64,000 nt of DNA from Saccostrea cucullata (GCF_032062105.1 NW_026920697.1:62001-126000); one strand, 5' to 3'. Counted from the stretch's first letter, positions 4,610-63,770 are shown. Notes: generated from the sequence alone by a model not told the origin. Program-made: numbers and translations.

Positions 4610-7413
4610 GTAGACATCCGCGTACTCTGCCTTCCTCTCATAAAAAGGACCTCTTTACGCATATGACACTACCAATGAGAGATTTTCTATAAAATTTAGT
4701 TGGAATCAAATGTAATCCACGACCAAAAAAAAAAAAAAACTGGTCGTTTTGTTTGGTCGTAACTAGTCTTTTCGTTCTCAAAATTATCCCCCCTCCACAT
4801 ATGAAATTTTGGATCCACCCTGATATAATCTTAACTACTTGCATACCTGTTTATCTATTATTTAGTGTAATATATTGATAAAGAAAGATTTATTATCAGA
4901 GGTATATGTGTACTGTTACAATTATCTTTATCAAATACAAATATTTCAAAGAATAAACATCATAAACCTAATTACCATTATAGCTGTACCTTCCATCTGA
5001 TTTTCATAAACCCTATCACACAGATCTTGTATATAGCTTAGAAGGTTTATATAAAATGAGTTTCTCTTTATAGACAAATATGAGAAGTATAAGTTAAAGA
5101 TGCTTTTATTTATATTTATTTATATACAGTTAAAAGTAATGAAGATGGGAAGTTAATTCAAGTTGATGTTTTATTACTACTTTAAGGAGTATAAACTGGG
5201 AAATTAACGTGACACATTTAAGTTAAGACATCCCTTGTTTAATAAATGATCTTTGTTATTATAATTAATATTTAAAGATTTTTTTTTTCATGTTATGAAA
5301 GCTTAGGAATGTAGGTAACGAAAAAAATGTTCCGTTAAGTTGACGTTATTTTCGTGCTGTACTATACATAAGAAAATGGTTAATAATTTATTGTTGTCAT
5401 GATACTTTGTATTAGATAAATCAAAGCTAAATTTATTACGCAAAATACTGTGCCAAACTGGCACAAGAATAAAACCCTTACCAAAATACTCACCTTCTAG
5501 CAACACTTTCTTGCATTATTGCAGCAATATTGCAGCAACATTCTAGCAATACATTGCAGCAATAGCAATATCGTTATTCATGCTAGGTCGGGACATTTAA
5601 AATCAATAATAGGATATAAAAATAGTTGCAGGTTCCTTGAAAATAAACCGAAAGAAGAAACAAAATACACTTAATTATGTTTTGATATGGCGGCGTACAG
5701 GTAGCATAAATTTACCTTCTGTAATTAAAAAAATCTATTCTTTTTTTTTTAGTAATTTCAAAGTAGTGCTTTTAAAGAGGTAATCAAATACTGTTTCGTA
5801 CACAGAAATTCTACTGCTGTATTTTCTAAGACTCTTTCAGTAGCTCCTCAATCGATTAATTTTTATTGGCCCAGTTCATACAATTTCATGATACACTGTA
5901 TTAGATAAATCAAAGCTAACTTTATTACGAAAATACTGTGCCAAACTGGCACATTTTCTTGGAGAATAAAACCTTCAAACGTTTAATAATCAATTTGAAA
6001 TCGATTTTTGAAACTCTTAGTATACATGCATCACAAGCACTAGTTGAAATACATATAATTTTTCTTATTTTATCTCCATAGAATCATTTATTTAAAAAAG
6101 AATATGGATTTGACTTACCAAGTTTGATATATATACCATGAAAACAGAGTTAGACATTCCTATAATTCTTTCAAAAGGCCATGCCACTGGAAACTGCTAA
6201 ATTTCTGGCTATTCCACGTTATTCAGTCTTACTAGTCATCATGTCTAATCCTACTGTATTGTTTGCTTCACTCTGTCTTAATTTATCTTTTCTCTTAATT
6301 AATATATATTTTGAAAAATTCTATTTCAAACAATGCCAAAGAACTAGCAATTATTCACTTCAATTCATGTAAAAAAAAAAACAACAACAAAAAACCCCTA
6401 TTATATACACTTATTTCAATAACAGCGCTTCGTAGATCGCCCGGAAGATTTTCTGAAAACATTTATACACTGTCACTGACTGAGTTTTTAAGAAGGATGG
6501 GTTCAAGTAGCAGTAAGTAATACTTTCTCTCTCTCTCTTTCTTTCTCTCTCGATTCTTAATTTTCAAACGGATTCTAGTATAAATTAAAACGAAGCCTTC
6601 AAAATAGAGGAAAGCAAAACAGAAAAACCTAATATTAAACAGTTCAATGTATTTCTTGTCAAATATATTTTGAAAAAATTCTATGCCAAAGAACTAGCAA
6701 TTATTTCAAACAACAAAAAACCCCTGTTATATGCCAATAAGAACTAGCAATTATTTACTGTCACTGAAAAAATATACAAAAAACTTTCTCTCTCTCTCTC
6801 TTATATACTTTCTCTCTCGATTCTTAATTTCAATAACTGAATTAAAACGAAGCCTTTGATTGTGTGTATAAAAAATGATATATATATATTTTTTTAACAC
6901 CTTAAATTTTTTTCTAGGCGAAGGCTAAAATCCAAAACAGAAAAGCCGAATATTAAACAGTTCAATGTATTTCTTGTCAAAAGTTTGATAAAATCCACAG
7001 GCCTTTGGATCGCCTAAAATAAACGGTACGGGTTGGGAATTTCATATTTTTACAATTTTTTATTTTGGATAATTTGAAACTCGAAATTTATTTCTTAATT
7101 TTGGCTAAAAGTATTTCTAAAAATATACAGAAATTTTTCCAAAAAAGAAAAAAAGAATACAGATTTGATCCGAAGGGGGGTCATGTCTACAGCACTCACC
7201 AAGAAAGAAACGTGCCTCTGAAAGAAAAAAAAAACCCTGAAAAACTAGCTGTTATATAAGGATAGAATAAGTTTTAGACCTAAGATCTAAACCTTCCACA
7301 GTGTTCAAACAACAAACACTTGAGTTTTTGTTAAAACATTCTGGTAATTTAAAGGACATGAAAAAAGTATTTTATGTGTGACTAAGATCAATACGATATG
7401 CATCTTTCAGAAA

Positions 7414-10400
7414 ATGGATGACTCTGTGAGGGGATTCAGGGGGAGGGGAAGAGGAGGACGAAGGCCGAGAAGAAATAGATCCCACACTCCACACAGAACC
7501 ACAGAAAACACTTTATCATCAAATCTAGTCCATGTCTACGACGATGACAACGATGGGGAAGAGGAAGAGGAGCGGATGCACACCTTGCCAATCTATGACT
7601 CGTCAGAATTCGACGACAACCAAGGAGGATCACAGCGAAGAAGAGGTGGAAGAGGGAGACCGAACTTTAGATGGAGGGGAAGAGGCGGTGATTCATATCA
7701 GGGTAGAGGATCAGCTTCTGATTCTAGTCGAGGAAGAGGCAGTGGACGTGGTAACCCCAGAGGTCAACGATCAAACTATGGTCACGGTGGTGGTGGTCAA
7801 TCCAGAACAAGAACGATGGGATACAAAAGACTGGAAGAACTCGATCTCGAAGACGATCCCGATGATGTCCTCCTTCAGTTAGTTACAACCAGAAATGGAT
7901 TTGAGGATTTACTCGAAAGAAAGTTACAAAAGGATTGGATGGTTCTACTTGTTTCAATCTTGGTAAAAGCATATAAATCAAACAAAGAACAAAGTTGCAT
8001 GGAGCTCACAAAGATTTTAAGTGCAAAAAATCTTATAGCAAACCACGTAATACCTTTTGTATGTAATGTCGAAGTTGGTGTGATTGAATTTGCAGATGAC
8101 ATCATGGTGAAGATTCTGTGGGACATGACCCAGTTGACTTTCATTTTGTTGCACCGTATGCAGAGCAGTGTGTTTTTGCTTAACACAGTCTTGGATACAC
8201 TAGAAAGACTGATATCCAGTAAATACAAAAACATCTGCGCCTTATCATGTCCAGACATATTTAAGCAGCTTGATGAACTGAGGGAGGCAAAAGAAGCCAT
8301 ACAAAGAGAGTACATTAAACGTCAAGAAGAAGAAGTGAAGCCAAAAAGACGTCCTCAGCCTTTAGAGCAAGAGCCACCAGATGATTTCCGAGAATTATCT
8401 GTTCTTCCAACTCTTCAAGACCTACAGTTTGACAGAAAACCCTTTTTACGATGTAACAAAACTAAAGGTGGCTATGCTAATCTGCAACAGTATCTAGACA
8501 TACAATTTCGCCTATTAAGAGAGGATTACTTGCATCCTTTGAGAGAGGGAATTCTTGATTACCGCAGAGATTTTGAGAGGTTCAAGAACGTGAAAGGTAA
8601 ACGACAGACAGACATCAGAATGTACGAGAATGTGGAGGTTCTTCGTCCGCTGTGTTCTAAACACGGAGTCAGGCACGTCATTAAATTTGATAACAGTAAA
8701 CTGACTCACGTACGCTGGGAATCATCGAGAAGATTGCTATATGGGTCATTACTTTGTCTGTCATCGGATGCATTCCAGACAATGCTATTTGCCACAGTGA
8801 CTGAAAGGAAGATCACAGATTTACAAAATGGAATTGTGGAAGTTCAATTCACAGAGGAGACAGAAGCAAGTGCCCTCTCCTCTACACAGACATATGTCAT
8901 GGCGGAAACAACAGCCTATTTCGAAGCTTATAAATATATACTTCAAGGATTACAAGAAGTTGGAGATGAAATGCCACTACAGTCCTGTATTGTTCATTGC
9001 AAGCCAAATGCAAAACCCCCAAAGTATTTGATAAAAGGTGGAACTGTACTACCATATGATTTCAGTCCACTGCTAAAGACCCAAAGGAGACCCAAAGTGT
9101 ACAACTGTCCTGTACTTAGCACCAATAGATGGCCTTCAGCTAGAGATATTGGAATGGACGATTCACAACACAAGGCCTTACAAATGGCCATCACAAGGGA
9201 AATTGCAATCATTCAAGGACCTCCAGGTACAGGCAAGACATACGTTGGCCTAAAAATCGTTCATCTTTTACTGCATAATAAAGAAATGTGGACTGAAAAC
9301 GTAAAAATGGATCCCATTTTAGTGGTATGTTATACCAATCATGCCTTAGATCAGTTTCTTGTTGGGATCTCCAAGCACTCGGATAAATTAGTGCGAATTG
9401 GTGGACGATGCAAAACGCAAGATTTAGAAGAATTTACTCTTCAAAGCTACCGGAAAAAAGCTCGTGAAGACAAGTCGATTTCGAGAACGATCCACGAAAA
9501 AAAGTCCGATTGTCTGAAAAACATGTGGAATTGCAGAGACCAAATAGAACGTGTCAGTCAGAAATTGAAATGTGCAAAGCAAGGTATTCTACATCTTAAT
9601 GAATTAAGCCGTTTTATGGACGATGATCATGTGCAATGTTTCCAAAATAATGCATTTGAAAATGAAATGTTTATGACCTCAATTCCAAGTAATCGATTGG
9701 ACGAATGGCTTGGTTTTAATGCCGACATTACATTTGATCCAGATGACATTGAAAATCAGCGTAAAAATATGTTGATGACAGAATGGGAGGAGGAACTAAC
9801 GAATGGATCTAAAATAGAGAGATTTACAAAAGACGAGGCAAGACAAGTAAAGCAACCGTGGCAACTACCTTTACAGGAAAGAGGATCTTTATATAAGTAT
9901 CTTTTGGTGGAATTCCAGGATTTTTTAAGTAATGAGATTATGGTTCTTGAAAACCAAACAGGAAAAACAAAAGTTTCAAAAAAGCAACAAAAGCTACCCA
10001 CAAATAAGCAAATAGAGGAACTTACGAAACTTCGAACAAAAAGTGAAAAGGTTGTCTTACAAATCGATACCTTGGTTGACCATATTCCCAAATATCTGAG
10101 GAGAATACCAAAGATGATTCAAGATCAGGGTGACATTTTGGACTGGTTGTGTCTTGATGGCTCACCAGAAAGCTGCAGCCGAATTGCAGAAGTTCTTAAG
10201 GAAGAGTGTGTAAATGCTAAAGAGGAGGCAGAGTTCGAAGATGAAGAAAGAAGATTGGAGGACGAAGAGGATGAAAACGACGATGAACTTCGATTCTTTT
10301 CTGGATATAGCAGTGAAACTGAAGCAAACCCCTCACAGAATTTAAGTCAAACATCCATTGAAATTCTTTACAAAAGAAACGAACGATCGTCAAATACCGA

Positions 10401-13400
10401 AGGCTGGGTTTATCAAATCAATCGCAATAAATTGCGTCGAAATCTTAAAAAGATTATTGACAGCAGCGACATTATGAGTGAAAGAGAAGTTCAGCAGGTG
10501 GGAAATGTATGGAAACTTGATTCTGCTAAACGAGAGAAGCTTTATCGTTATTGGTTGAAGTGCTATACCACCCATATGAAAGAATCCATAAAAGAAGCAG
10601 AAAAACAGTATGATGATCTATGCAAAGGTTATAGAGAAGTTTTAGATGCTGAGGATGTAGATATAATGAGAGGAGCTGACGTCATAGGAATGACTACCAC
10701 AGGTGCAGCAAAATACAGGAATATTCTTCAATCTATCAAACCAAAAATAATTATTGTTGAGGAAGCTGCCGAAGTGTTGGAGTCACACATCGTCACTACA
10801 ATTAATTCAAACTGTCAACACCTCATTCTGATTGGCGATCACAAGCAACTGCGTCCTACCCCTACCGTTTATCACCTTGCAAAGAATTTCAATCTGGATA
10901 TTTCCTTATTTGAAAGAATGGTTAACAATGAATTGAATTATGTGACATTAGGCATACAACACAGAATGAGACCGGAAATATCAATGTTAATGAAATACAA
11001 AGATCTCTATCCAAATCTTGATGACCATGAAGACGTGAAAAAGTACGAACATATCAAGGGTGTAATTTCTGATGTTTATTTCATTAACCACAACGAACCA
11101 GAGTTGGAACAAAGGGAGACGAAAAGCAAATCAAATATCCACGAAGCAAAGTTAGTCAAAAGACTTTGTAGATATTTTATTCAGCAAGAATATGAGCGAA
11201 GCCAAATAACGATTCTTACAGCATACACAGGTCAAATTCTTGCATTAAAGAAAGAAATGCCAAAACATGAATTTGAAGGCATTCGCATCACATCGGTAGA
11301 CAACTTCCAGGGCGAAGAAAATGACATCATCATACTTTCACTTGTGCGTAGCAACAACTTAGGAAGCACGGGATTTCTAAAAATAGACAATAGAATTTGT
11401 GTTGCGTTATCAAGAGCTAGAAAAGGGATGTTTGTTATTGGCAATTTTGATCTCTTATGCTCAGAGAGTGAATTTTGGAAGTACATAGTAGAGACGATGG
11501 ACGGAAAGGGGAATTACGGAAGAAGTCTTGTACTACGGTGCGGAAACCATCCTAGAAATAGTGTTCATGTCAGTCGAGATACTGACTTTGATCAGGTACC
11601 AAATGGAGGCTGTTCTCTCCCTTGTAATTTCGACCTGAATTGCTCTCATAAATGTGGCCAAATCTGTCACATTTCTGATCCAAAGCATGAGCATTACAAG
11701 TGCCTTCAACCATGTTTGAAGAAATGCATAAAAGGACACAATTGTCCACGAAAATGTTTTCAAGACTGTGGAGACTGTCCTGTGAAAGTCCCAAAAATAA
11801 TTCCTTCCTGTGGACATACTGAAAACGTCCCATGCTCTGTGGACGAAAATATGTGGAATTGCAAATCTCAGTGTGGACAAATTCTTCCTTGTTTACATAA
11901 ATGTAAAGGAGAATGTGGTAATTGTAGATTAAAAAATGCGCATAAGGAATGTCAAGAACTATGTGAGAAACGCCTCCCTTGTGGTCACTTTATTATTACA
12001 AAGTGCTGTGAAGATGTAGAAACCGTTATTTGCGAAAGAGAGTGCGTCATTGAGCTTGAGTGTGGTCATATTTGCAGCGGAACTTGTGGTTACTGTCAAC
12101 AAAGTCGATTACACATTCCATGTCAATTAAAATGTGGACGTAAACTTGTATGTGGACACACATGTGCAAGACTTTGTGTTGAAGGCTGTCCACCTTGCAA
12201 CCAAAAATGTCGAACCATGTGCACCCATAGACAATGTAAGGCAAAATGTGTAGACCCCTGTCACGAGTGCGACAAGCCTTGTACGCGATCCTGTGAACAT
12301 CAGGAATGTCTAAATAGGTGTGATGAAAAGTGCAGTTCACTACCGTGTTCGAAAAACTGCTCGAAGAAGCTTCGATGTGAACACGAATGCTTAGGGGTTT
12401 GTGGTGGAAAATGTCCACCAGTGTGCCAAACATGCCATCGTATAACATTCGAAGGTTCCATAGACACTATAGACAACGACATACGCTTCGTATCACTGAA
12501 TTGTAATCACACATTCAGTCTTAATTCTATGGACTCGTACATGTTTAACCCTGGAAGGATTCAGAGTTCATCAGTGCCTGTAGGTATTAGGCAGTGTCCT
12601 GCATGTCCACGGCAAATAACAAAAAGTGTGAGATACAAGTCAGTAGTCGAAGAAATCAGAAAAGATATAGAAGTTATTAAGAAGAAAATAACAACTGACG
12701 ATATGTCATCTCTTAAAAGGGGAGTAGACTATATCAAAGAAAAATCAGTCTTTTTGCGAAAAAAAGATTCAGAGGCCGTTGATCGAATCATCAAGCAACT
12801 TGAAGAGAAAGATATGCTGCCAATTGAAAAAGTAACTTTAGCTCACTTACAGACAGTTATCCTAGAAATAATTTATCACATTTTTCAAACAATTCTTCAA
12901 TCTGACATTGAAGAAACTAGAGAGGAAAAAATAATCGGATCACAGTTAACGAGGATTCGTCAATGGTTGTTTGAAAATATCTACATTGTTACAGAAAATA
13001 AGAAAAAGATACAAAAGGCAAGAAAACGAACATGTTTTTCAAAACAGGAACTTCTCGATGTTCGTATGGAATTGCTACGACTTGCATACCAGGTCCAGTT
13101 CCTGAAATTAACGAACAGGTCAAGTACGGACAGAGATGATATCAGAAGCAAATATGGTCCTATTGTTGATTTACTATTAACGGAAAAATTGCCACTTTTG
13201 GATAAAAAGTATCAGAGAGTCCGTTTATTGGCGAGGGCATACGGTGTAGGACTGGACGACAAAATATTTGATGAGTTGCTGAATCTTGCAGATTTGGGAA
13301 GTCGTAGAATATGGCAATATGGAACCTGGTACAAATGTAAAAATGGTAAGATTATATCTTTTGACAGAAGAATTCGATTTATATTTTTCTTAATAAAATC

Positions 13401-15147
13401 ATTTTCTTTCATAGTGAGATGTATTTTGTCTATTTTAGGGCATGTTTCCAGTACCTACAAAGAAGAAGAGCAGTGTCCATCTTGTATTCTATTTATTGGA
13501 AAAAAAACCTACGATGAGATAGTACCTCCGAGACGAGTTCTATCAGAACCAATACCAGAGGATCAGAGGAAGAAATCAACGCAGTTTTCTGACAATAAAG
13601 CAAATTTAGAAAGCAAGACTCGAACAAGTCAGGAAAACTTCGAATTTTTAACAGATGCTTCGAAATTAGCTTCTCGTGAAATTGTTTTTAAAAATGAATT
13701 CAAAAGACCAATCAGCACGCCAGAATATACAGCGTCAGGATATACTCCAAACATAAAACCAAAAACTATGTCTCGATTGGAAACTGTTACTCCACTACAG
13801 GAAATGGATAACGAAGGCATAATATGGAGTCCATCCGTGGTGTCTGGATATTCTTCGAAGGCAAAATATTATGACAGACCCTCATCCGTTGGGGCAGTTC
13901 CAAAAGATACCAGACAAAGCACTAGCAAAACCGAACAAAAGGCTAAGCAATATGCTTCTTTAAACACGCAGCCAGAAACAAAGTATGCATGGCAGAAAAC
14001 TAACCTTGTCCCAAAAGACGAAAATGATGTTTATAAACCAACGTTTCCTCAACCAACTCTCTCATCACCCTCGGCTAGCGATAAGAAACAAACCGATAGG
14101 AAAAGTGTCTACACCTCAAAAGAACTTTATACACCTACCCACATTAAGAGCGCTGAACCAAATGGTGCAGATGTGGGACTTGATAAAGGAAAAGTGAGTT
14201 ATGAGACCGAAAAACACTCTGAAATTTTATCTACGTCACAGGTATTCGAAAGACAATTGAAGCCCATGAGAAGTCCCATAGATATCGATATCAGCTTTGA
14301 CCTTGCCAAAGAAAAGGAAGCTCAAGTACCGGTTACAAAGACGACCCGCAAAGAAGCAACGTCGTCCAATCTGGAGAAAAGATCAACAGGGGATGAACAT
14401 AAGAGACCTTCACTTTCCAAATGTCCAAATGGTAAGATTCAACATTAAGGGCATGTTAAATTATGTGGTTATACTTAAAAGTTTGCTAAAACACAATGCA
14501 TTTGCTGTCACACGTTTGAGGTGATTCTTCAAATAATTTCAATTGTAGCTTGAATAGGTATACCAATGAGTAGTAGCTGATTTTAACTAGAGAGAGATTT
14601 CATAAATTCAGATTTGATAGAAACATTTTTTAATGTCAAGGGATAGTATGTAACAACAACAATATTGGGTCTAGATCGATATTATCTCTGGAAAAATTTA
14701 TATTGGCATGTCGTATTAACTTGCTGCACAATGTAATCGGAATCAGCTAGAACTTGTCAATGGAATTGCCATTACTTCCTGGCGGAGGGTTGCAAATTTA
14801 AATTTATACTTACACTGTATACTCAGCACTGAGGACCATTGAACAGTGAGGGATCTTTTTCGTGCCAGCACTTACTGCGACACAGGTTAATAAGAGGACT
14901 GCCTGATCAGCGGGTTTTCTCAAAAAGTAAACTTAGGACAAAGGACCAAAATATTCAGTGATATGCGTTTTTGACATTATATCATAAATCAAATACAGGT
15001 CATTTTTATATCAGTATTATTATGATTATACATGAAGTTTGATATGATGAGAAGTTTCTGTTATATGCTTTTGTTACAGGTCATCTAATGCTAAGAAACG
15101 AGATCCAGTGTCGCTGGTGCAGCAGAAGTTATGACAGTGAGGTGTAA
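7414..15147 (+). CDS. ZNFX1: NFX1-type zinc finger-containing protein 1 (UPF1-like SF1 RNA helicase). Exons 7414-13345, 13439-14431, 15080-15147
   Basis: RGG-rich N-terminus; PPDDFRELSVLPT and YLDIQFRLLREDY; WESSRRLLYGSLLCLS; IQGPPGTGKT, VEEAAEV, LIGDHKQLRP, SLFERM, QHRMRPEI, VDNFQGEE, NRICVALSRA; long NF-X1-type Cys/His array; ATG follows a TTTCAG acceptor; GT-AG introns restore two C-x-N-G-H motifs. Confidence 0.95.
14770..14886 (-). mobile_element. SINE fragment (Meta/MESC-like core) in the last ZNFX1 intron
   Basis: GAGGGTTGCAAATTT...CCATTGAACAGTGAGGGATCTTTTTCGTGCCAGCACTTACTGCGACAC is inverse-similar to 26190-26285. Confidence 0.55.
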
Positions 15148-17099
15148 TGCTAAATAATACAAATTAAGTAGACAAACAGGCCAATTAAGCTTTGGTTAAA
15201 TACATTTTATACAGTTTTAGAAAATAATTACTTTCTAGATTTTAGCAAAGAAATGATGTATTGTACATATTTTGGTTTCGAATACCCTTCAGCTCTTTGT
15301 ACTTTTAAATGTATCATGGTTACAGAGGGTCTGTTTTATTTTATTACAAATTTTAATCTTCGAGGTAAAGTAAATGCTATATGTTATCTATAAAATAAAG
15401 TATGGAAAAGGGAAACAAAAAAAAAAAAATAGATGCAGTTATATCCGCATACACGGTATGTGTCACGAGTAAATATGTGTAATCAGCAATTTCATATCTT
15501 AGGAAATTTCTTAAATTCCTTTTCTATATTTTCTGGAAGGAAATGCTGCATACAGTAAAACTTGTCTTATCCGGATGTTGTAAATTCCGAAATCTTGTCT
15601 AATGCGATGGAATTTTTTTTTTTTTTTTTTTTTGTATATAAAATCCCTTTCAGTATATTCAATTATTAAAGATGTTGTCTTACCCCATCGTCGCAAACCA
15701 CTGCCAAAATGTAGGACCCTCTCCCATTCAGGAGATAGTGGACTCTGAACCGTGGCTTCAGACGATGGGCTTATCCGGAATACTGTGTTATCCGGTCAAT
15801 TTGTTTGGAACCAGTGGAGAATTTAGTTTCACTTGTATATTTACTGAATTTTCTATTACTTTATAAACAATGAGGGAGTCATTTTTTGTGTGTCAGAAAA
15901 ATGTATGTCGTATTCCATTTTCTACCCCAATCGCCACCATGATCGAAATAAAATGTAACAATTTGATACATAACTACAGGATACCGAATAGAAACAAACA
16001 AAATACATCAAACTTTATAAAGTTTTTTTTCCGAATCGGTCACCCCAAATTTAACTACAAAATCTATTGAAATTTGGTAGTTAAACCTATGTGTTGTTTT
16101 GAGATGTGTAGTAATAGCTACCAGCAATTTCAAAATTTTTGTACCCTATTTTTTTGTATCGTATATTACTGTAACATGATTGAGTTGTAGATTTCAGATT
16201 TAATAGTAATGCTGCTGGAAATTGAAGTCTGTACACTTGAAGTTTGTACACCTATAGAATTCCAATTCTAACAAAATAAATACATTGTAAATAAACAAAA
16301 CCAAAACAAATAAAAAAAAAGAGAAGAAAAAACAAAAAAAGAGAGAAAAAAACAAAACGAACACAAAACAAAACAATAAAAAAAACTAACAACATTTAAA
16401 AATGATTAATTTATCAACTAGAATATATTCTTTCGATCATTGACATATACTTGAGGTTTCGCACATGATGATATTAGATGTAAATGAATGGCTATCAATC
16501 AATATTATAATTTATCAATACTTTCAAAGAAAAAAATTGTAATATCTATAATTACATCGGGTATTTATAAATATTTCATTAATATTTCATTAATATGTAT
16601 ATCAGAACAGGATAGTGTTTCTAGGAATTCCTTAATGACAATGCTAAATCGTGATAGATTCAAAAAGATATCAAAGCGATAAGTAACGCCTCATGTAACA
16701 GGTAGATAAAGGAGATACACGAAAAGAAAGGCTATATCGCATAAACTCATGCATGCTCGGTATAAAAAAGAACAAGAGCAATGTAGTTGAGAAAAAAACG
16801 AGTAGAGAATACTGTATATATTCGTACAGTGTACCGACTACTGTGAGTGAGAAACAATGAATAAGGCTTTTCTAGATCCTAGCATGTAGAAAAGTTAAAA
16901 TGGAGTAATTGCAAAACACCAAGTGTTTGCAAATTAAATCATATACAAGCGTTTAAAATTGAATTTGAAGATTTGTAAAGTGAATGAATCCCCCCGTTTG
17001 GGGGATAGTTTGTTAAACCCCGCCACGCGGGTGCCGAACTGTAATCATTTTGTCTAACGTCTTTCGATCCTTTCCGTAGGGTGCTTCGACTTTTTTTTG

Positions 17100-21308: not shown

Positions 21309-22916
21309 TTAGCTGAGAGACACTCGGTTTGTTGGTCCTCTATGAATGGGCGGAATCGAGGCGGGGACTGAATCTGTCCTCTTTGGTTTCCATGGAGACC
21401 TGGGACTGTACGTGTAGCACTTGGGTATGCTCACGTGACGTTCAGCGAGATTTTGATTGGAGTCAGGTAGGACATACGTCACTCCGAGATCTTTTACCGC
21501 AAATTTCTGAATTGGAGGAATGTTGACTGTGTTCCCTGTAGTCGTCTCCTTCTTTGTTAAGCAAGCTTTAAAGCCGTTTCGCCGATAGAGAAAGTCAATT
21601 CTACTTGGATTTCTCTCGGGGGCCCATCGAACCGGTGGAATATTTGGTGCACACTTTTCGTGAATAAACTTTGACCTTTGAAGATAAAAACCCTCTGTAA
21701 ATTCAATGTTAGGAGTATCTTTTGGGGATACATAATTTGTCAAAGACTTCTCTCTTAACATTTTTTGTGGAGAAGACTTTGTCATTTTACAAGGTGACAC
21801 GATATTAGAGTACCGTCTAGGGACTGGAGATACGGGGGTGGATCCTACAGAAGAGGTTGGCGGAACGGGAGGAGGAGACCTGTGTTTAAAGATCATTTCT
21901 TCCTCTGCGACAGGCGTAGAGGACGAAGCGGTATTTCGAGATTGCCGAGAAAATCTTTCATAGAAATCATGGCTGTAATTTATCGTATCGATATCCTTGA
22001 ATAACGGTTTAGGTGTAACTTGCTGAATGTCACACAGAATACATTCATCATTATTAACATCTGAAGCAAAGCCTTTCCTCCACTTAATTATTCGGCGATA
22101 ATATTCCTCCCTGGCGTGCGAGCCGAGCTGAGGATAGTGACAGAGTGTATTCCACACTTTTTTACCAAACCACTTCTCTGGCACATCGTCTTCCGTGGCG
22201 TTACCGAGCGGTACTTTATGTACTTTACATTTCTTTTTCTTCTTCAGTTTTTCCAGACGTTTCCCCTCTTGTTTATTACATACGTGCAATCGAAATATTC
22301 CACCAAAAATAGTTTCCCCATCCTGTTTCAGGGTTCCTAGTTCTTTGATTGGTAACTTTTTCATTTTTACCTTCTTGTTTATCGGGCGAAGTAAATCCTT
22401 TCCCCTTTTCCTCATTCTCTGTTTGGATACTTTTGGTACCACGTTTTCTTCTTCGTCTCTGACAGAAGCGAACTCCTGTAAAACATCGGGAGCAGTAGGG
22501 GAGTTGGTGTGTTCTTGTTTTGCTTCTTCTCGGTATTCATTTTTCTCCTGTTTTCTACAATTAATTTGGTTTTCTGAAGATTCTTTTAACGCATCAGCAG
22601 AGCTACTGTTATTGTGTTTCCCCTCTAGACCATCATATTCATTAATAAGAAGTTCTGCATTTTCCAAAGAATGTAAAGAATTTTTTTGTGTCGAATAATT
22701 TTTCTCCATAGAGCAAGATATTATGGCAGCATTTCCTTTTTCATCTCTAAGTCGTGAACAAGTTTCATATTCAAATTTTGTATTTATTTCCTTTCGGTTT
22801 CCCGAGTTCTTTGGCTTTTCTGGCCTCGGTGTATTTTTTGGAGGTTCACATCCTTGGCAAGGGTAATTACTTTCACCATCTACTTCCTTTTTTGTCGTGA
22901 GATTGGAAAAAGACAT
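21309..22916 (-). CDS. Uncharacterised single-exon 535-aa protein (basic, S/P-rich, largely disordered, with a central ordered segment)
   Basis: 1.6-kb ATG-initiated open frame in AT-rich DNA; no recognised domain. Confidence 0.75.
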   Translation of the reverse strand: MSFSNLTTKKEVDGESNYPCQGCEPPKNTPRPEKPKNSGNRKEINTKFEYETCSRLRDEKGNAAIISCSMEKNYSTQKNSLHSLENAELLINEYDGLEGKHNNSSSADALKESSENQINCRKQEKNEYREEAKQEHTNSPTAPDVLQEFASVRDEEENVVPKVSKQRMRKRGKDLLRPINKKVKMKKLPIKELGTLKQDGETIFGGIFRLHVCNKQEGKRLEKLKKKKKCKVHKVPLGNATEDDVPEKWFGKKVWNTLCHYPQLGSHAREEYYRRIIKWRKGFASDVNNDECILCDIQQVTPKPLFKDIDTINYSHDFYERFSRQSRNTASSSTPVAEEEMIFKHRSPPPVPPTSSVGSTPVSPVPRRYSNIVSPCKMTKSSPQKMLREKSLTNYVSPKDTPNIEFTEGFYLQRSKFIHEKCAPNIPPVRWAPERNPSRIDFLYRRNGFKACLTKKETTTGNTVNIPPIQKFAVKDLGVTYVLPDSNQNLAERHVSIPKCYTYSPRSPWKPKRTDSVPASIPPIHRGPTNRVSLS

Positions 22917-59818: not shown

Positions 59819-62074
59819 TCACACTATTGTGAACATTTCGCTTTTTTCTTCTGTGTAATTCAGTAGTTCTCCGGAGTCTTGTATGTTGACAACAGTGCTT
59901 CCTGTTCTTTCGTGAACGAGATTACAATCAGTCATATATACAACTTCCTCATTTACATAAGTCACCACTTCCGCTGTTGGTGCTTCTTTCCCAGAAGTTC
60001 TGTCTGATTTCAGTGTAGACTCTATCACTGTGATCTGTCCTTGTGCATCATCCAAATTTTCCTCCGAAACAGTTTCTGATTGTATTTCCCTCTCCTCGAG
60101 TATCGTGCTTTGTTCATTGTGTCTTTTTGTGTCTATTATTGCTAAGTAATCCGCGGAGCTTCTTTTTTCAAGGTCATCTTCAACACTGACACTTTTATTT
60201 TTATCTAATATAAACATGACACCAAGGCTTTGCGAAGACTTGGAACCTAATGTCTTGTTCTCCCGTGGATCACAAGGCCTTTTTCGTCCCATACATCCCG
60301 TTTTAGACCTCTGTAATATATATGGATGTTTTTCCTTAAGCCTTTGAATGTACCAAGTTAACTGTGGGGTGAATTCCTCTTTACTGTCATCTGTGTCTGA
60401 ATCATCGTCACTGCTGATATTCCAACTCCTTGAAGCAGTTACATCTAGAGACATACTTCTAGTAGCTCCACGGTCTCTCGGGATAGGCAAAGAACATCCG
60501 ATGTTGAGATTGCGCGTGTCCTTTACTACTTTTGTATGACAAGTTCCCCAGTCTAGGTACTCCGTATTTTCCACCTTTTTGGATTTAATTTTCTTTTTTC
60601 GTTTAGAACCCGTTTGTGACCGAGGTCTGTGAAGCTTATTTTGAATTGGGTTTGGAGGTATCTTAATCTTTTGATTCCTACAAGGTGTCGGGCATTTCTC
60701 TCTGACGGTTCTTCCCCTGTGGTCTAATACTGGAGGTTGCTTTATGTCCTCTGCAGATGAGTTAGGTACGGAAGCTCTATCGAGTCCCTGTACCATAACA
60801 GAAGTTGTATAATCATACACCTTTTCAATTTTGTCTTTTGTCGATGGAGTTGATTCTTGGGAATTTGGGACCAACGAATTATTAGAATACACAGTTTCAG
60901 TACTCTTCTGTTTGCAATATCCGAGTGCTTTCACATTATTTTCCCAATTATCACTTTTTGTATTTTTTAAATCAGATCGACTGGTATGGATTTGCACTTC
61001 AGCGTTAGAGGTGACGCATTTTAACACAGTATCCCCCGCCGAATCTTTCTCGTCTTTTGGGGCCTTGTAGTCTTCTGGTTAGAATTAAAAAGTTTAAGAT
61101 TACAGAAGACATATATAATTCTATAATAACAGTTAATCAATCTTTCATCAAGAGAAATTAAAGATAAGAGATCAAAATGCACACGATACTTATATAGAAT
61201 TTTGAAAATTTATTAAGTTGTAGATTTGTTTGTGTAAATACATCTTTTTCTTTTTAAAAAAAATACATTTAATTAAACAATAGTTTTTGTTTCAGTGTCC
61301 CGTTTTAAAAAATGTAAAATAAGTATAGAATTCATGAATTACCAGTCTTTGGCATAGATCCAGTTACATCTTGATCCCTTCCCGAGTTTTGAGATTCCAT
61401 CCGATGTCTTTTCCAGGGGGCTGTCCTATTACAGAGAGAATCAGTTTTAACACAACTTCATGTCTACCATTCTGTATTCTGAAGATAAGGATTGATGCCT
61501 TGTGAAATGTAACAGGTATATACCTACCCTATTTTCCACCTCTTTCTAAACATGTAAAGCTGAAACACTTGGAGGATGATGGCAATGCCAAGGAGAATAA
61601 AAACTGGAAGAAAATAATAATAACCCAATCCTTTCATATTGAAAACTGGAAAAAGTTTTCAAATAAACATTTTATAACATGTATAAGATAACATAAAGCA
61701 ATAGATATAAAAAAAAAATATTGAGCCTGAAAAAGCATTGGTCTCAAATAAACACAAACTATTTTCTTAACTTTCTCGCATTTATCAACATGCACAAGAA
61801 AGTTATTATAGTAAGTAGATCGCAAATTTAGTAATATTTTTACCGATGACACCTTCTTTAGTTATAGTCCCTGCTCTTATTTCCTCGGCATAAGTGGCAC
61901 ACCTTTCTTTGTCCCCAAAACAGCAGGTCGAGTTCTTGCTATCAAAGCAAAGAATGAAAACATTGACATAGGACAAAATTTTAATCAGCGCCACTACACA
62001 TTTAATACATTTCACATATAAATTGGAGAGTATAGGTCCGTTGATTAAGTAGATCTAACTTACATTTTATCCAT
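59819..62074 (-). CDS. Uncharacterised single-pass membrane protein with a long low-complexity tail. Approximate exons 62074-62064, 61938-61844, 61603-61529, 61425-61343, 61074-59819
   Basis: Spliced frame MDKIKNSTCCFGDKERCATYAEEIRAGTITKEGVIVFILLGIAIILQVFQLYMFRKRWKIG...EDYKAPKDEK joins the 402-aa ORF; start exon uncertain. Confidence 0.7.
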
Positions 62075-62975: not shown

Positions 62976-63770
62976 TTGAAAACCTTTCCATTGTGTACAT
63001 ATGAAAAACTCCACTTGAAATTTTGTAAATCAGTACTAGGTGTGCATAAAACTGCAACTAATTTTGCTGTATTGTCTGATTTAGGTAGATTTCCCCTGCA
63101 CTTTGACATTGTAAGATCAATGATAAGGTACTGGTATAGGCTTGAAAATCTAGGCCATTCTTTCCCAATTTTAAAAGATGCATATTGTGAATCCAAATCA
63201 TTGTTTGAGAAAAACATCCCTTCTTGGTACAGCTCCATTAATTTTCTTATTACCAATATCGAGGGTATTCGTGATTTAACTTCAGTCAAAATGCACAAAT
63301 TCAAACGTGAACTTAAAGATTGTTTATTTAGATATTATATACAAGAGTGGAATTCTCAACTTAAATCACACTCTGATAAAAAGCTGAGATGCTATAGCAC
63401 TTTTAAACAAAATTTTGGTCAAGAAAAGTATCTTTATTTAATTAAGAATTTTGAGCAGAGGAGAAGTTTTACTCGTTTTCGCATATCAGCTCACAGACTT
63501 AATATTGAAAGGGGTCGATATATAGGTATTCCTAGAGAAGAAAGACACTGCAATAGATGCAATAACAAAACAGTTGATGATGAGAAACATTTTCTCTTTT
63601 CATGTAATCACATTAAGGATGAAAGAAAAGTCTTGTATGAATTAATAAACAATTCCTGTAAGAATTTCCACAACTTGGACAGTGAAAATAAGTTAAATTG
63701 GCTCATGACTAATGAGGATGTGCAAATACTGATTCAAGTCAGTAAAATGATTATGAGAGCTGAAGTATGA
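62976..63770 (+). mobile_element. 5'-truncated non-LTR retrotransposon (L2/CR1-group-like) ORF2 C-terminus
   Basis: EKLHLKFCKSVLGV...NFAVLSDLGRFPL; KLRCYSTFK...EKYL; RFRISAHRLNIERGRY..IPREERHCNRC....DDEKHFLFSC (CCHC); followed by (TTGT)n and poly-T. Confidence 0.85.

What the first reader, a model, noticed from the sequence alone, without database searches (positions are those of the whole stretch)
13321..15147. ZNFX1 ends in two degenerate RZ-like fingers, each split by an intron at the same position and lacking the catalytic Cys
Seen: splicing 13346-13438 gives GTWYKCKNG|HVSSTYKEEEQCPSC, and splicing 14432-15079 gives LSKCPNG|HLMLRNEIQCRWC. Both donors read AAATG|GTAAGATT, and a ~300-aa S/T/K/P-rich linker separates the two motifs. 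Known: ZNFX1 and RNF213 carry one RZ finger (C-x3-H...GxC...CxxC...IGG..H), and in RNF213 the GxC cysteine is the E3 nucleophile. Inference: an exon-module duplication left two shortened fingers that keep the four Zn ligands but lack the GxC Cys and the downstream His. This would be an RNA-sensing paralogue uncoupled from RZ-dependent ubiquitin ligation (decoy, scaffold or dominant-negative regulator).
Basis: partly seen in the sequence, partly recalled or inferred. Interest (0 to 1): 0.8.

Follow-up and report, generated by a model that had tools for sequence, protein, structure and literature searches.

The report
Oyster ZNFX1 paralogue with two stripped RZ fingers
A hooded-oyster antiviral-type RNA helicase gene (ZNFX1-like) really does end in two shortened zinc knuckles derived from the RZ ubiquitin-ligase finger, both lacking the catalytic cysteine; the layout is conserved across oysters, but the rest of the enzyme looks intact, so this is a variant ligase rather than a proven decoy.

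Summary
The window is Saccostrea cucullata. It matches the 2330-aa public model P0001 exactly. One RNA contig crosses each junction.

The same two-knuckle C-terminus is present in S. echinata, Ostrea edulis and Crassostrea gigas, and in a 33%-identical paralogue of this genome.

Finger 1 aligns column for column with canonical RZ fingers. It lacks five residues, including the nucleophile Cys, and IGGxxH has become IGKKTY. Finger 2 (C-x3-H-x8-CRWC) is shorter still.

The Gly|His phase-1 intron is also found in canonical RZ paralogues of this genome, so it is ancestral to the finger.

Loss of the RZ thioester relay is a sound inference. However, the helicase (dN/dS 0.12) and the Miz-like RING (Zn ligands invariant) are conserved. 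A RING-only E3, as proposed for C. elegans ZNFX-1, is therefore more likely than a decoy.

Nucleophile-less RZ fingers recur in ZNFX1-like paralogues of other marine animals. Only the tandem form appears oyster-specific. I class this as a new variant of a known kind, of moderate interest.

The parts
7414..13345 (+). Exon 1 of the ZNFX1-like gene (1977 codons plus 1 base). It encodes an RG-rich N-terminus, the ZNFX1 domain, the SF1 helicase core, NFX1-type Cys-rich fingers, a Miz-like RING, a helical region and the N-half of finger 1.
   Evidence: Pfam gives ZNFX1 116.9 bits, AAA_11 88.9 bits and AAA_12 144.3 bits. The sequence aligns to the human ZNFX1 chain 9q9z_A at E 1e-269. It is identical to P0001. 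dN/dS against S. echinata is 0.147.
12415..12687 (+). Miz-like (SP-RING/U-box hybrid) domain candidate, P0001 residues 1668-1758. It carries the C-x-H ... C-P-x-C motif.
   Evidence: C, H, C-P-x-C, L and R-Y are invariant or nearly invariant across 33 ZNFX1-like proteins. The AF2 model has pLDDT 71. Foldseek and VIA top hits are almost all RING E3 domains, but the scores are weak: E >= 0.13 and Z <= 4.5.
13327..13345 (+). Finger 1 N-half, W-Y-K-C-K-N-G(1st base). The Cys is Zn ligand 1.
   Evidence: It aligns with G-H-W-[FY]-K-C-P-N-G of canonical RZ fingers. Pfam RZ model positions 7-17 match here.
13346..13438 (+). Intron 1 (93 nt, GT-AG, phase 1, in frame without a stop).
   Evidence: An X1 RNA contig crosses the junction. 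The S. echinata intron is 434 nt and unalignable. The same intron position occurs in canonical paralogues L001 and L002.
13439..13512 (+). Finger 1 C-half, H-x10-C-P-S-C-I-L-F-I-G-K-K-T-Y. It provides ligands 2-4. The catalytic loop is shortened by 5 residues, and Tyr stands where the general-base His should be.
   Evidence: Alignment A2. The ligand, nucleophile and base positions come from bioRxiv 10.1101/2025.10.14.682297. The motif is conserved in S. echinata, O. edulis and C. gigas.
13513..14418 (+). Disordered linker, rich in S, K, T, E and P and free of Cys. It contains conserved islands, including S-P-I-D-I-D-I-S-F-D-L-A at 14272-14334.
   Evidence: Composition. dN/dS is 0.57 and all indels are multiples of 3. 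The conserved islands appear in the four-oyster alignment A4.
14419..14431 (+). Finger 2 N-half, K-C-P-N-G(1st base).
   Evidence: Canonical paralogue L002 has an identical K-C-P-N-G|H layout.
14432..15079 (+). Intron 2 (648 nt, GT-AG, phase 1). It holds an interspersed-repeat fragment at about 14818-14886.
   Evidence: An X3 contig crosses the junction. The S. echinata intron is 331 nt. The repeat has at least 1930 candidate copies in the genome.
15080..15147 (+). Exon 3 coding part: finger 2 C-half H-x8-C-R-W-C, an 8-residue tail ending S-E-V, and the stop codon.
   Evidence: C-R-W-C and the terminal [ST]-x-V are invariant in four oyster orthologues. dN/dS is 0.18 over 21 codons.

Best explanation
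This is the 3' end of a functional Saccostrea cucullata ZNFX1-like helicase gene. It belongs to an oyster-wide orthologue group in which the C-terminal RZ finger has been remodelled.

Finger 1 sits exactly where the RZ finger sits in canonical ZNFX1. It keeps the four metal ligands (C-x3-H-x10-C-x2-C). It has lost five loop residues, including the thioester-forming Cys. It carries Tyr in place of the general-base His.

Finger 2 is a second, shorter copy (C-x3-H-x8-C-R-W-C) at the extreme C-terminus, behind a roughly 310-aa disordered linker.

Both fingers are split by the ancestral phase-1 Gly|His intron of the RZ finger. This indicates that an intron-containing finger module was copied once, before the oyster genera and the two Saccostrea paralogues diverged.

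Shown here:
- the gene structure;
- homology of finger 1 to RZ;
- loss of the catalytic pair;
- conservation and purifying selection.

Inferred:
- The protein can no longer relay ubiquitin through an RZ thioester.
- It keeps helicase activity and RING-type (E2-to-substrate) ligase activity through its Miz-like domain, as proposed for C. elegans ZNFX-1.
- The two Zn knuckles serve as structural or binding modules, for ubiquitin, E2~Ub, RNA or partner ZNFX1 protomers.
For: Gene model and splicing:
- The splice model equals the public protein P0001.
- One RNA contig crosses each junction.
- GT-AG sites, intron phase and a 3n exon 2 (993 and 987 nt) are conserved in S. echinata, while the introns are unalignable and of different length.

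Conservation of the architecture:
- The same two-knuckle layout occurs in O. edulis P0175 and C. gigas P0163.
- It also occurs in the paralogue, seen as P0008 and as L019 in this genome.
- Loop lengths of 10 and 8 are invariant in all of these.

Homology to RZ:
- Alignment A2 places the four finger 1 ligands in the invariant or near-invariant C/H/C/C columns of 33 ZNFX1-like proteins, with a 5-column gap over the nucleophile.
- Canonical paralogues L001 and L002 have ...KC[KP]NG|GTAAG and ag|GTCAT at the same position and phase.

Selection and retained domains:
- dN/dS is 0.12 for the helicase, 0.13 for the Miz-like region, 0.57 for the linker and 0.18 for exon 3.
- The Miz-like C-x-H...C-P-x-C motif is invariant, and fold hits are RING domains.

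Literature:
- Human ZNFX1 uses C1849/H1853/C1869/C1872 as ligands, C1860 as nucleophile and H1881 as base.
- The Miz domain alone supports E3 activity in vitro.
- C. elegans ZNFX-1 lacks RZ altogether.
Against: - No biochemical data exist for this protein.
- Zn binding by the shortened loops is inferred from ligand conservation only.
- Fold matches for the Miz-like domain are weak (E >= 0.13, Z <= 4.5).
- In human cells, mutations in either Miz or RZ strongly reduce autoubiquitylation, so an RZ-less protein could be a poor ligase in vivo.
- RNA support is one contig per junction, from runs that differ by 1-5% from the assembly.
- Finger 2 gives no Pfam RZ hit at all. Its RZ origin rests on the C-x-[NK]-G|H motif plus intron phase.
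Confidence: 0.6

Rival explanations
1. The paralogue is a ligase-dead decoy, scaffold or dominant-negative regulator that binds RNA or canonical ZNFX1 polymers but cannot ubiquitylate.
For: Both fingers lack the catalytic Cys/His pair. In human cells an RZ nucleophile mutant severely impairs autoubiquitylation, and ZNFX1 acts in polymers with trans activity. At least 9 ZNFX1-like loci coexist in this genome, so co-assembly partners are available.
Against: The Miz-like RING ligands are invariant and that region evolves at dN/dS 0.13. In vitro the human C1860S mutant keeps wild-type E3 activity through Miz. The helicase motifs are intact. Nothing here tests co-assembly.
Confidence: 0.15
2. The knuckles are trans-acting partners in a split-site ligase. 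The paralogue supplies helicase, Miz and ubiquitin-docking knuckles, and it borrows the catalytic RZ of a canonical paralogue inside mixed oligomers.
For: A split-site or trans mechanism between protomers has been proposed for ZNFX1 (PMC13710534). The hydrophobic helix preceding finger 1 is retained in the alignment, with a short insertion. Canonical RZ-bearing ZNFX1 genes exist in the genome.
Against: This is purely inferential. No co-expression or interaction data exist. The helix-to-finger connector is 4-6 residues longer and was modelled with low confidence, with pLDDT 48-60.
Confidence: 0.15
3. Finger 2 did not arise by internal duplication. It was captured from the terminal exons of another ZNFX1 paralogue, by exon shuffling or fusion after tandem gene duplication.
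For: Finger 2 reads K-C-P-N-G|H exactly like canonical paralogue L002, whereas finger 1 reads K-C-K-N-G|H like L001. ZNFX1 genes are clustered, for example three on contig C6117.
Against: Both P and K variants occur among canonical genes, so this is not discriminating. Both fingers share a shortened, Cys-less loop. That is more simply explained by copying an already degenerate finger.
Confidence: 0.2
4. The tail is a gene-model artefact or a decaying pseudo-exon pair, and the real protein ends at or near exon 1.
For: A predicted C. angulata isoform (P0161) stops right after exon 1. A S. echinata paralogue model (P0157) uses a different last exon. Read depth is very low.
Against: The ORF, intron phases, ligand residues and loop lengths are conserved in four genera and in a paralogue. 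dN/dS is below 1 with only 3n indels. RNA contigs cross both junctions.
Confidence: 0.04

Closest known systems
Canonical RZ finger of ZNFX1 and RNF213 (Pfam PF20173 ZnF_RZ-type)
   Same: Finger 1 occupies the same C-terminal position after the helical region and has the same G-x-W-[FY]-K-C-x-N-G-H start. Its four Zn ligands fall in the same alignment columns. A residual I-G follows the C-x-x-C. The phase-1 intron matches that of canonical oyster paralogues.
   Different: The loop is 10 residues in finger 1 and 8 in finger 2, against 15 in the canonical finger. There is no nucleophile Cys (human C1860 / RNF213 C4516) and no general-base His (H1881 / H4537). The Pfam score is below the gathering cut-off for finger 1 and absent for finger 2. 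There are two copies instead of one.
C. elegans ZNFX-1 (a ZNFX1 homologue without an RZ domain)
   Same: It is a ZNFX1-family helicase that has lost RZ catalysis while keeping the Miz-type domain. It is proposed to act as a RING-like ligase.
   Different: The nematode protein lacks the RZ domain entirely. The oyster protein keeps, and has duplicated, a stripped Zn-binding core and has added a 310-aa linker.
Nucleophile-less RZ-like fingers in other ZNFX1-like paralogues (Argopecten, Dreissena, Haliotis, Gigantopelta, Lytechinus, Clavelina, Albula, Megalops)
   Same: They share the C-x2-G-H ... C-x2-C core at the same position, without the G-x-C-G-G loop and without I-G-G-x-x-H.
   Different: They have single fingers with other loop lengths (12-17). 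Only the scallop protein also has a long disordered tail, and it ends in a different Cys cluster. None of the 150 best representatives outside oysters shows the tandem 10+8 form.
Pseudo-catalytic domains in paralogue families (for example pseudo-E2 UEV domains and pseudokinases)
   Same: The fold and metal scaffold are retained while the catalytic residue has been lost, and the domain is conserved under selection. This suggests a binding or regulatory role.
   Different: This is an analogy only. No binding function has been shown here.

Membership tests
RZ-type zinc finger (PF20173) | Four metal ligands C-x3-H ... C-x2-C | tested here: met
   Finger 1 is C-K-N-G-H-x10-C-P-S-C and finger 2 is C-P-N-G-H-x8-C-R-W-C. 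The finger 1 ligands fall in the invariant or near-invariant columns of alignment A2.
RZ-type zinc finger (PF20173) | 15-residue loop carrying the nucleophile Cys (H-x-Y-x-I-G-x-C-G-G) | tested here: not met
   The loops are 10 and 8 residues with no Cys. A 5-column gap covers the E-C-G-G-A stretch.
RZ-type zinc finger (PF20173) | I-G-G-x-x-H after C-x-x-C (general-base His) | tested here: not met
   Finger 1 has I-G-K-K-T-Y, with Tyr at the His column. Finger 2 ends 8 residues after its last Cys, with no His.
RZ-type zinc finger (PF20173) | Pfam gathering score (27 bits) | tested here: not met
   Finger 1 scores 16.7 bits (P0001) and 17.0 bits (P0002), matching model positions 8-46. Finger 2 gives no hit at E <= 10.
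RZ-type zinc finger (PF20173) | Homologous position and gene structure (descent from an RZ finger) | tested here: met
   The position in the protein matches 26 canonical relatives. The phase-1 Gly|His intron matches canonical paralogues L001 and L002.
RZ-type zinc finger (PF20173) | E2-dependent transthiolation / E3 activity | not testable with these tools
   This needs activity-based probes or autoubiquitylation assays.
ZNFX1 helicase family | ZNFX1 domain plus SF1 helicase core (AAA_11/AAA_12) | tested here: met
   PF25396 scores 116.9 bits, PF13086 88.9 bits and PF13087 144.3 bits. The match to the human ZNFX1 chain 9q9z_A has E 1e-269.
ZNFX1 helicase family | Miz-like (SP-RING/U-box hybrid) E2-binding domain before the helical region | tested here: inconclusive
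   C-x-H...C-P-x-C, L and R-Y are invariant or nearly so across 33 relatives. AF2 pLDDT is 71. Top structural hits are RING E3 domains, but at only E 0.13-1.5 and Z <= 4.5. No Pfam model hit was found.

The most novel reading that the evidence does not exclude
The stripped, duplicated RZ knuckles are non-catalytic readers of ubiquitin, E2~Ub or RNA. They let this oyster-specific paralogue co-assemble with canonical ZNFX1 polymers. There it would tune, or redirect from ester-linked RNA marking to RING-type protein marking, the ubiquitin output of the antiviral ZNFX1 system. That would make it a naturally evolved separation-of-function allele of the Miz/RZ two-step ligase.
Probability: 0.15. Interest if true: 0.6.

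Novelty: new variant of a known kind. Interest (0 to 1): 0.4.

Why it matters
Work from 2025-26 showed that ZNFX1 is a two-component E3. A Miz-type RING hands ubiquitin to the RZ Cys, and this relay has been linked to ubiquitylation of RNA.

The oyster lineage described here has kept the helicase and the Miz-like RING under purifying selection for the whole history of the Ostreidae. Over the same time it has deleted exactly the catalytic loop of RZ and duplicated the remaining metal core. It is therefore a natural separation-of-function experiment.

It could show two things. The first is what the RZ scaffold does apart from catalysis. The second is what a Miz-only ZNFX1 does in an animal that relies heavily on innate antiviral defence, for example against OsHV-1.

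The finding also warns annotators. 'ZNFX1-like' genes in expanded invertebrate families differ in whether they can perform RZ chemistry, and nucleophile-less RZ fingers are recurrent in marine animals.

Tried and rejected
- PDB sequence search with the C-terminal 481 aa gave no hit. The only ZNFX1 entry (9q9z_A) stops at residue 1451, so human Miz and RZ numbering could not be mapped by direct alignment.
- Foldseek with the whole 371-aa C-terminal model returned only helical-bundle noise such as GPCRs and V-ATPase stalks. I then folded the Miz-like piece alone.
- The model coordinates are not exposed, so I could not measure the Zn-site geometry of finger 1.
- I looked for an alternative terminal exon that would restore a full RZ finger. 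A six-frame regex for the RZ C-half (C-G...C-x-x-C...G-G, I-G-G-x-x-H) found none in the 64 kb window. The genome-wide PF20173 scan listed no match on this contig.
- The 13-nt donor identity is not evidence of recent duplication or gene conversion, because the S. echinata orthologue does not share it.
- Blasi et al. 2022 (Fish Shellfish Immunol 121:456), the most relevant survey of metazoan ZNFX1, is not in the held library. I cannot exclude that it mentions these variants.
- I did not send a complex-prediction job for knuckle plus ubiquitin. I do not claim binding.
Spliced sequence was used only through the stored public proteins P0001, P0002, P0175, P0163 and P0008, by reference. All window and locus exons were analysed separately.
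Full report
**What is at the locus.** The window is contig C2834 of a 1.17-Gb Saccostrea cucullata assembly. A 2356-codon mechanical ORF (7378-14448, + strand) dominates the region. Pfam finds a ZNFX1 domain, AAA_11 and AAA_12 in it. It aligns to the human ZNFX1 cryo-EM chain 9q9z_A at E 1e-269. The gene is one of at least nine ZNFX1-domain loci in this genome.

**Checking the observation.**
- Exon 1 ends ...TGG TAC AAA TGT AAA AAT G at 13345.
- Intron 1 (13346-13438) is GT...AG.
- Exon 2 starts GG CAT at 13439 and ends ...AAA TGT CCA AAT G at 14431.
- Intron 2 (14432-15079) is GT...AG.
- Exon 3 starts GT CAT at 15080 and stops at TAA 15145-15147.

Both introns are phase 1, inside the Gly codon that precedes His. 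Exon 2 is 993 nt, so it is symmetric with respect to reading frame. Intron 1 is 93 nt, in frame and free of stops, which is why the ORF list reads through it.

The spliced protein has 2330 residues. It is identical to the public model P0001, named 'NFX1-type zinc finger-containing protein 1-like [Saccostrea cucullata]'.

The 13-mer AAATGGTAAGATT occurs only at the two donors, against 0.01 expected. The S. echinata orthologue has GTAAGAAA and GTAGGTCT after its donors. The exact identity is therefore partly coincidence and not a mark of recent copying.

The linker between the fingers is 312 aa. It is S/K/T/E/P-rich and contains no Cys.

**Are the junctions used?** Only one read-laying run was allowed, and depth was low. 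Two contigs are informative.
- Run X1, record 2, lies on 13182-13346. It continues with 16 letters that match exon 2 from 13440 at 15 of 16 positions. The single difference is a synonymous change in the His codon.
- A contig of run X3 stops fitting at 14433. It continues with 11 letters identical to 15082-15092. X3 covers the end of exon 2 and exon 3 at word depths of 100-350. It covers intron 2 at about 5, apart from a repeat.

Each junction is therefore seen once. The laid reads are mostly 95-99% identical to the assembly, so the RNA probably comes from a divergent lineage of the species complex.

**Comparative support.** This evidence is stronger than the RNA evidence.
- In S. echinata (locus L022) the exons align at 87.5%, 77.8% and 83.9% nucleotide identity.
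- Neither intron aligns between the two species. Their lengths differ: 434 and 331 nt in S. echinata against 93 and 648 nt here.
- All four splice sites are GT-AG at the same codon positions, and exon 2 is again a multiple of three at 987 nt.
- RefSeq-type models from Ostrea edulis (P0175, 2331 aa) and Crassostrea gigas (P0163, 2408 aa) have the same C-terminus.
- Unspliced Logan contigs from two of these clusters show the intron at the same place.
- The only paralogue in this genome that shares the C-terminal helical region (contig C14080, locus L019, 33% identity) has the same three-exon layout. It reads ...WFKCKYG|H-x10-CGSC, then a linker of about 110 aa, then ...RCDKG|H-x8-CTYC.
- Loop lengths of 10 and 8 are invariant in all six proteins.

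**What the fingers are.** According to bioRxiv 10.1101/2025.10.14.682297, the human ZNFX1 RZ finger coordinates Zn through C1849, H1853, C1869 and C1872. It uses C1860 as nucleophile and H1881 as general base. That gives the spacing C-x3-H-x6-C-x8-C-x2-C-x8-H.

A profile search of 1.84 billion representatives with the C-terminal region returned 1537 relatives. Most of the best-scoring relatives whose C-termini are present carry the canonical C-x2-G-H-x15-C-x2-C finger. These have H-x-Y-x-I-G-x-C-G-G in the loop and I-G-G-x-x-H after the C-x-x-C.

In a 33-sequence alignment (A2), the C, H, C, C of finger 1 fall in the invariant or near-invariant ligand columns. A five-column gap removes exactly the E-C-G-G-A stretch, and I-G-G-x-x-H reads I-G-K-K-T-Y.

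On the spliced protein, Pfam's RZ model matches finger 1 over model positions 8-46. The score is only 16.7 bits against a 27-bit cut-off. Finger 2 gives no hit. Finger 1 is thus a genuine but stripped RZ finger.

The RZ ancestry of finger 2 rests on three points:
- the K-C-P-N-G|H start, identical to canonical paralogue L002;
- the same intron phase;
- the same Cys-less short loop.

**The intron.** A genome-wide scan with PF20173 found 16 canonical RZ C-halves above the cut-off. Two of them (L001, L002) begin right after an acceptor ...ag|GT CAT. They have upstream exons ending HW[YF]KC[KP]NG|GTAAG. This is the same position and phase as both introns here. Most other RZ loci are split one exon boundary later, just before the C-G of the loop.

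The Gly|His intron is therefore an ancestral feature of one class of oyster RZ fingers. Its presence in both knuckles indicates that a segment spanning the intron was copied. The duplication predates the two Saccostrea paralogues and the Saccostrea/Ostrea/Crassostrea splits.

**Selection.** Against S. echinata, Nei-Gojobori dN/dS values are:

| Region | dN/dS |
|---|---|
| Exon 1 overall | 0.147 |
| Helicase | 0.116 |
| Miz-like region | 0.133 |
| Helical region plus finger 1 N-half | 0.130 |
| Exon 2 overall | 0.53 |
| Linker | 0.57 |
| Exon 3 (21 codons) | 0.18 |

The linker evolves fast but stays open, with only 3n indels. It contains conserved islands: V-P-P-[RK], V-Y-[TG]-[ST]-[KE]-E-L, and S-P-[IL]-D-[IL]-D-I...D-L-A...A-Q-V-x-V.

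**Function.** Loss of the RZ thioester relay is a fair inference, because both the nucleophile and the base are gone. The cited work adds two points. ZNFX1 has a second ligase element, a Miz-type RING (human residues 1566-1632). The RZ nucleophile mutant keeps wild-type E3 activity in vitro, and C. elegans ZNFX-1 lacks RZ altogether.

The corresponding oyster segment (P0001 1668-1758) keeps the C-x-H ... C-P-x-C ligands, the L before C-x-H and the R-Y after. All of these are invariant or nearly so across 33 relatives. An AF2 model of it (pLDDT 71) retrieves almost exclusively RING E3 domains: RNF4, BRCA1, APC11, RBX, RBR RING1 and the MYCBP2 RING. The scores are weak, with Foldseek E >= 0.13 and VIA Z <= 4.5. 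I therefore rate fold membership as inconclusive but consistent.

The helicase motifs are intact. The most economical reading is a helicase with RING-only ligase chemistry, whose two Zn knuckles serve a non-catalytic role. The decoy reading and the trans-complementation reading remain open, and nothing here tests them.

**Novelty.** I found no description of degenerate or duplicated RZ fingers in the held literature. The key survey, Blasi et al. 2022, is not held.

Nucleophile-less or shortened RZ-like fingers are not unique to oysters. Among the 150 best representatives they also occur in ZNFX1-like proteins of Argopecten, Dreissena, Haliotis, Gigantopelta, Lytechinus, Clavelina, Albula and Megalops. 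The tandem 10+8 arrangement with a long linker was seen only in oysters.

I class the finding as a new variant of a known kind. It is real, conserved and mechanistically suggestive, but it is not a new kind of system.

Noticed in passing
window 13346-13438: Intron 1 is 93 nt, in frame and free of stops. Retention would insert 31 hydrophobic residues between ligand 1 and ligand 2 of finger 1. ORF callers read straight through it, giving the ORF 7378-14448. The S. echinata intron is 434 nt, so the open frame is probably accidental.
   Followed up: partly
window 14818-14886 (inside intron 2): A fragment of an interspersed repeat with at least 1930 candidate copies in the genome and 90-94% identity over a core of about 69 nt. 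It dominates read depth in every RNA run laid. It partly accounts for intron 2 being 648 nt here against 331 nt in S. echinata.
   Followed up: partly
window 15136-15144; P0002, P0175 and P0163 C-termini: All four oyster orthologues end in [S/T]-x-V-COOH (SEV, SAV, TPV, SPV), the consensus of a class I PDZ-binding motif. The paralogue does not.
   Followed up: no
window 14272-14334: An acidic, hydrophobic island S-P-I-D-I-D-I-S-F-D-L-A-K-E-K-E-A-Q-V-P-V is nearly invariant in four oyster genera within an otherwise fast-evolving linker. It is a candidate short linear motif or helix.
   Followed up: partly
P0161 (C. angulata isoform X2); P0157 (S. echinata paralogue): Predicted isoforms exist that stop one codon after exon 1 (...WFKCRSGK*), or that replace the finger 2 C-half with another terminal exon. 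Exon 2 here is phase-symmetric (993 nt), so skipping it would join the finger 1 N-half to the finger 2 C-half in frame.
   Followed up: no
P0011/P0158 (Argopecten irradians): The scallop relative has a degenerate finger (C-x4-H-x11-C-P-R-C). This is followed by a tail of about 470 aa with repeated W-T-x-P-K-P motifs and a different C-terminal Cys cluster. It may be a sister architecture.
   Followed up: no
G000 loci L005-L016: Most RZ C-halves in this genome are split by an intron just before the C-G of the catalytic loop, and not at Gly|His. There are thus two intron classes of RZ finger. I did not determine which genes the second class belongs to (RNF213-like or other).
   Followed up: no
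window 12800-15800, runs X23, X24, X1 and X3: Nearly all reads and contigs labelled with the same species are 95-99% identical rather than at least 99% identical to the assembly. They carry many fixed differences, which suggests a different lineage of the S. cucullata complex.
   Followed up: no
window 62976-63770 (+): A mechanical ORF with a sub-threshold BTG-family match (20.3 bits against a 23-bit cut-off). The ORFs at 21309-22916 (-) and 59819-61027 (-) have no Pfam match.
   Followed up: no
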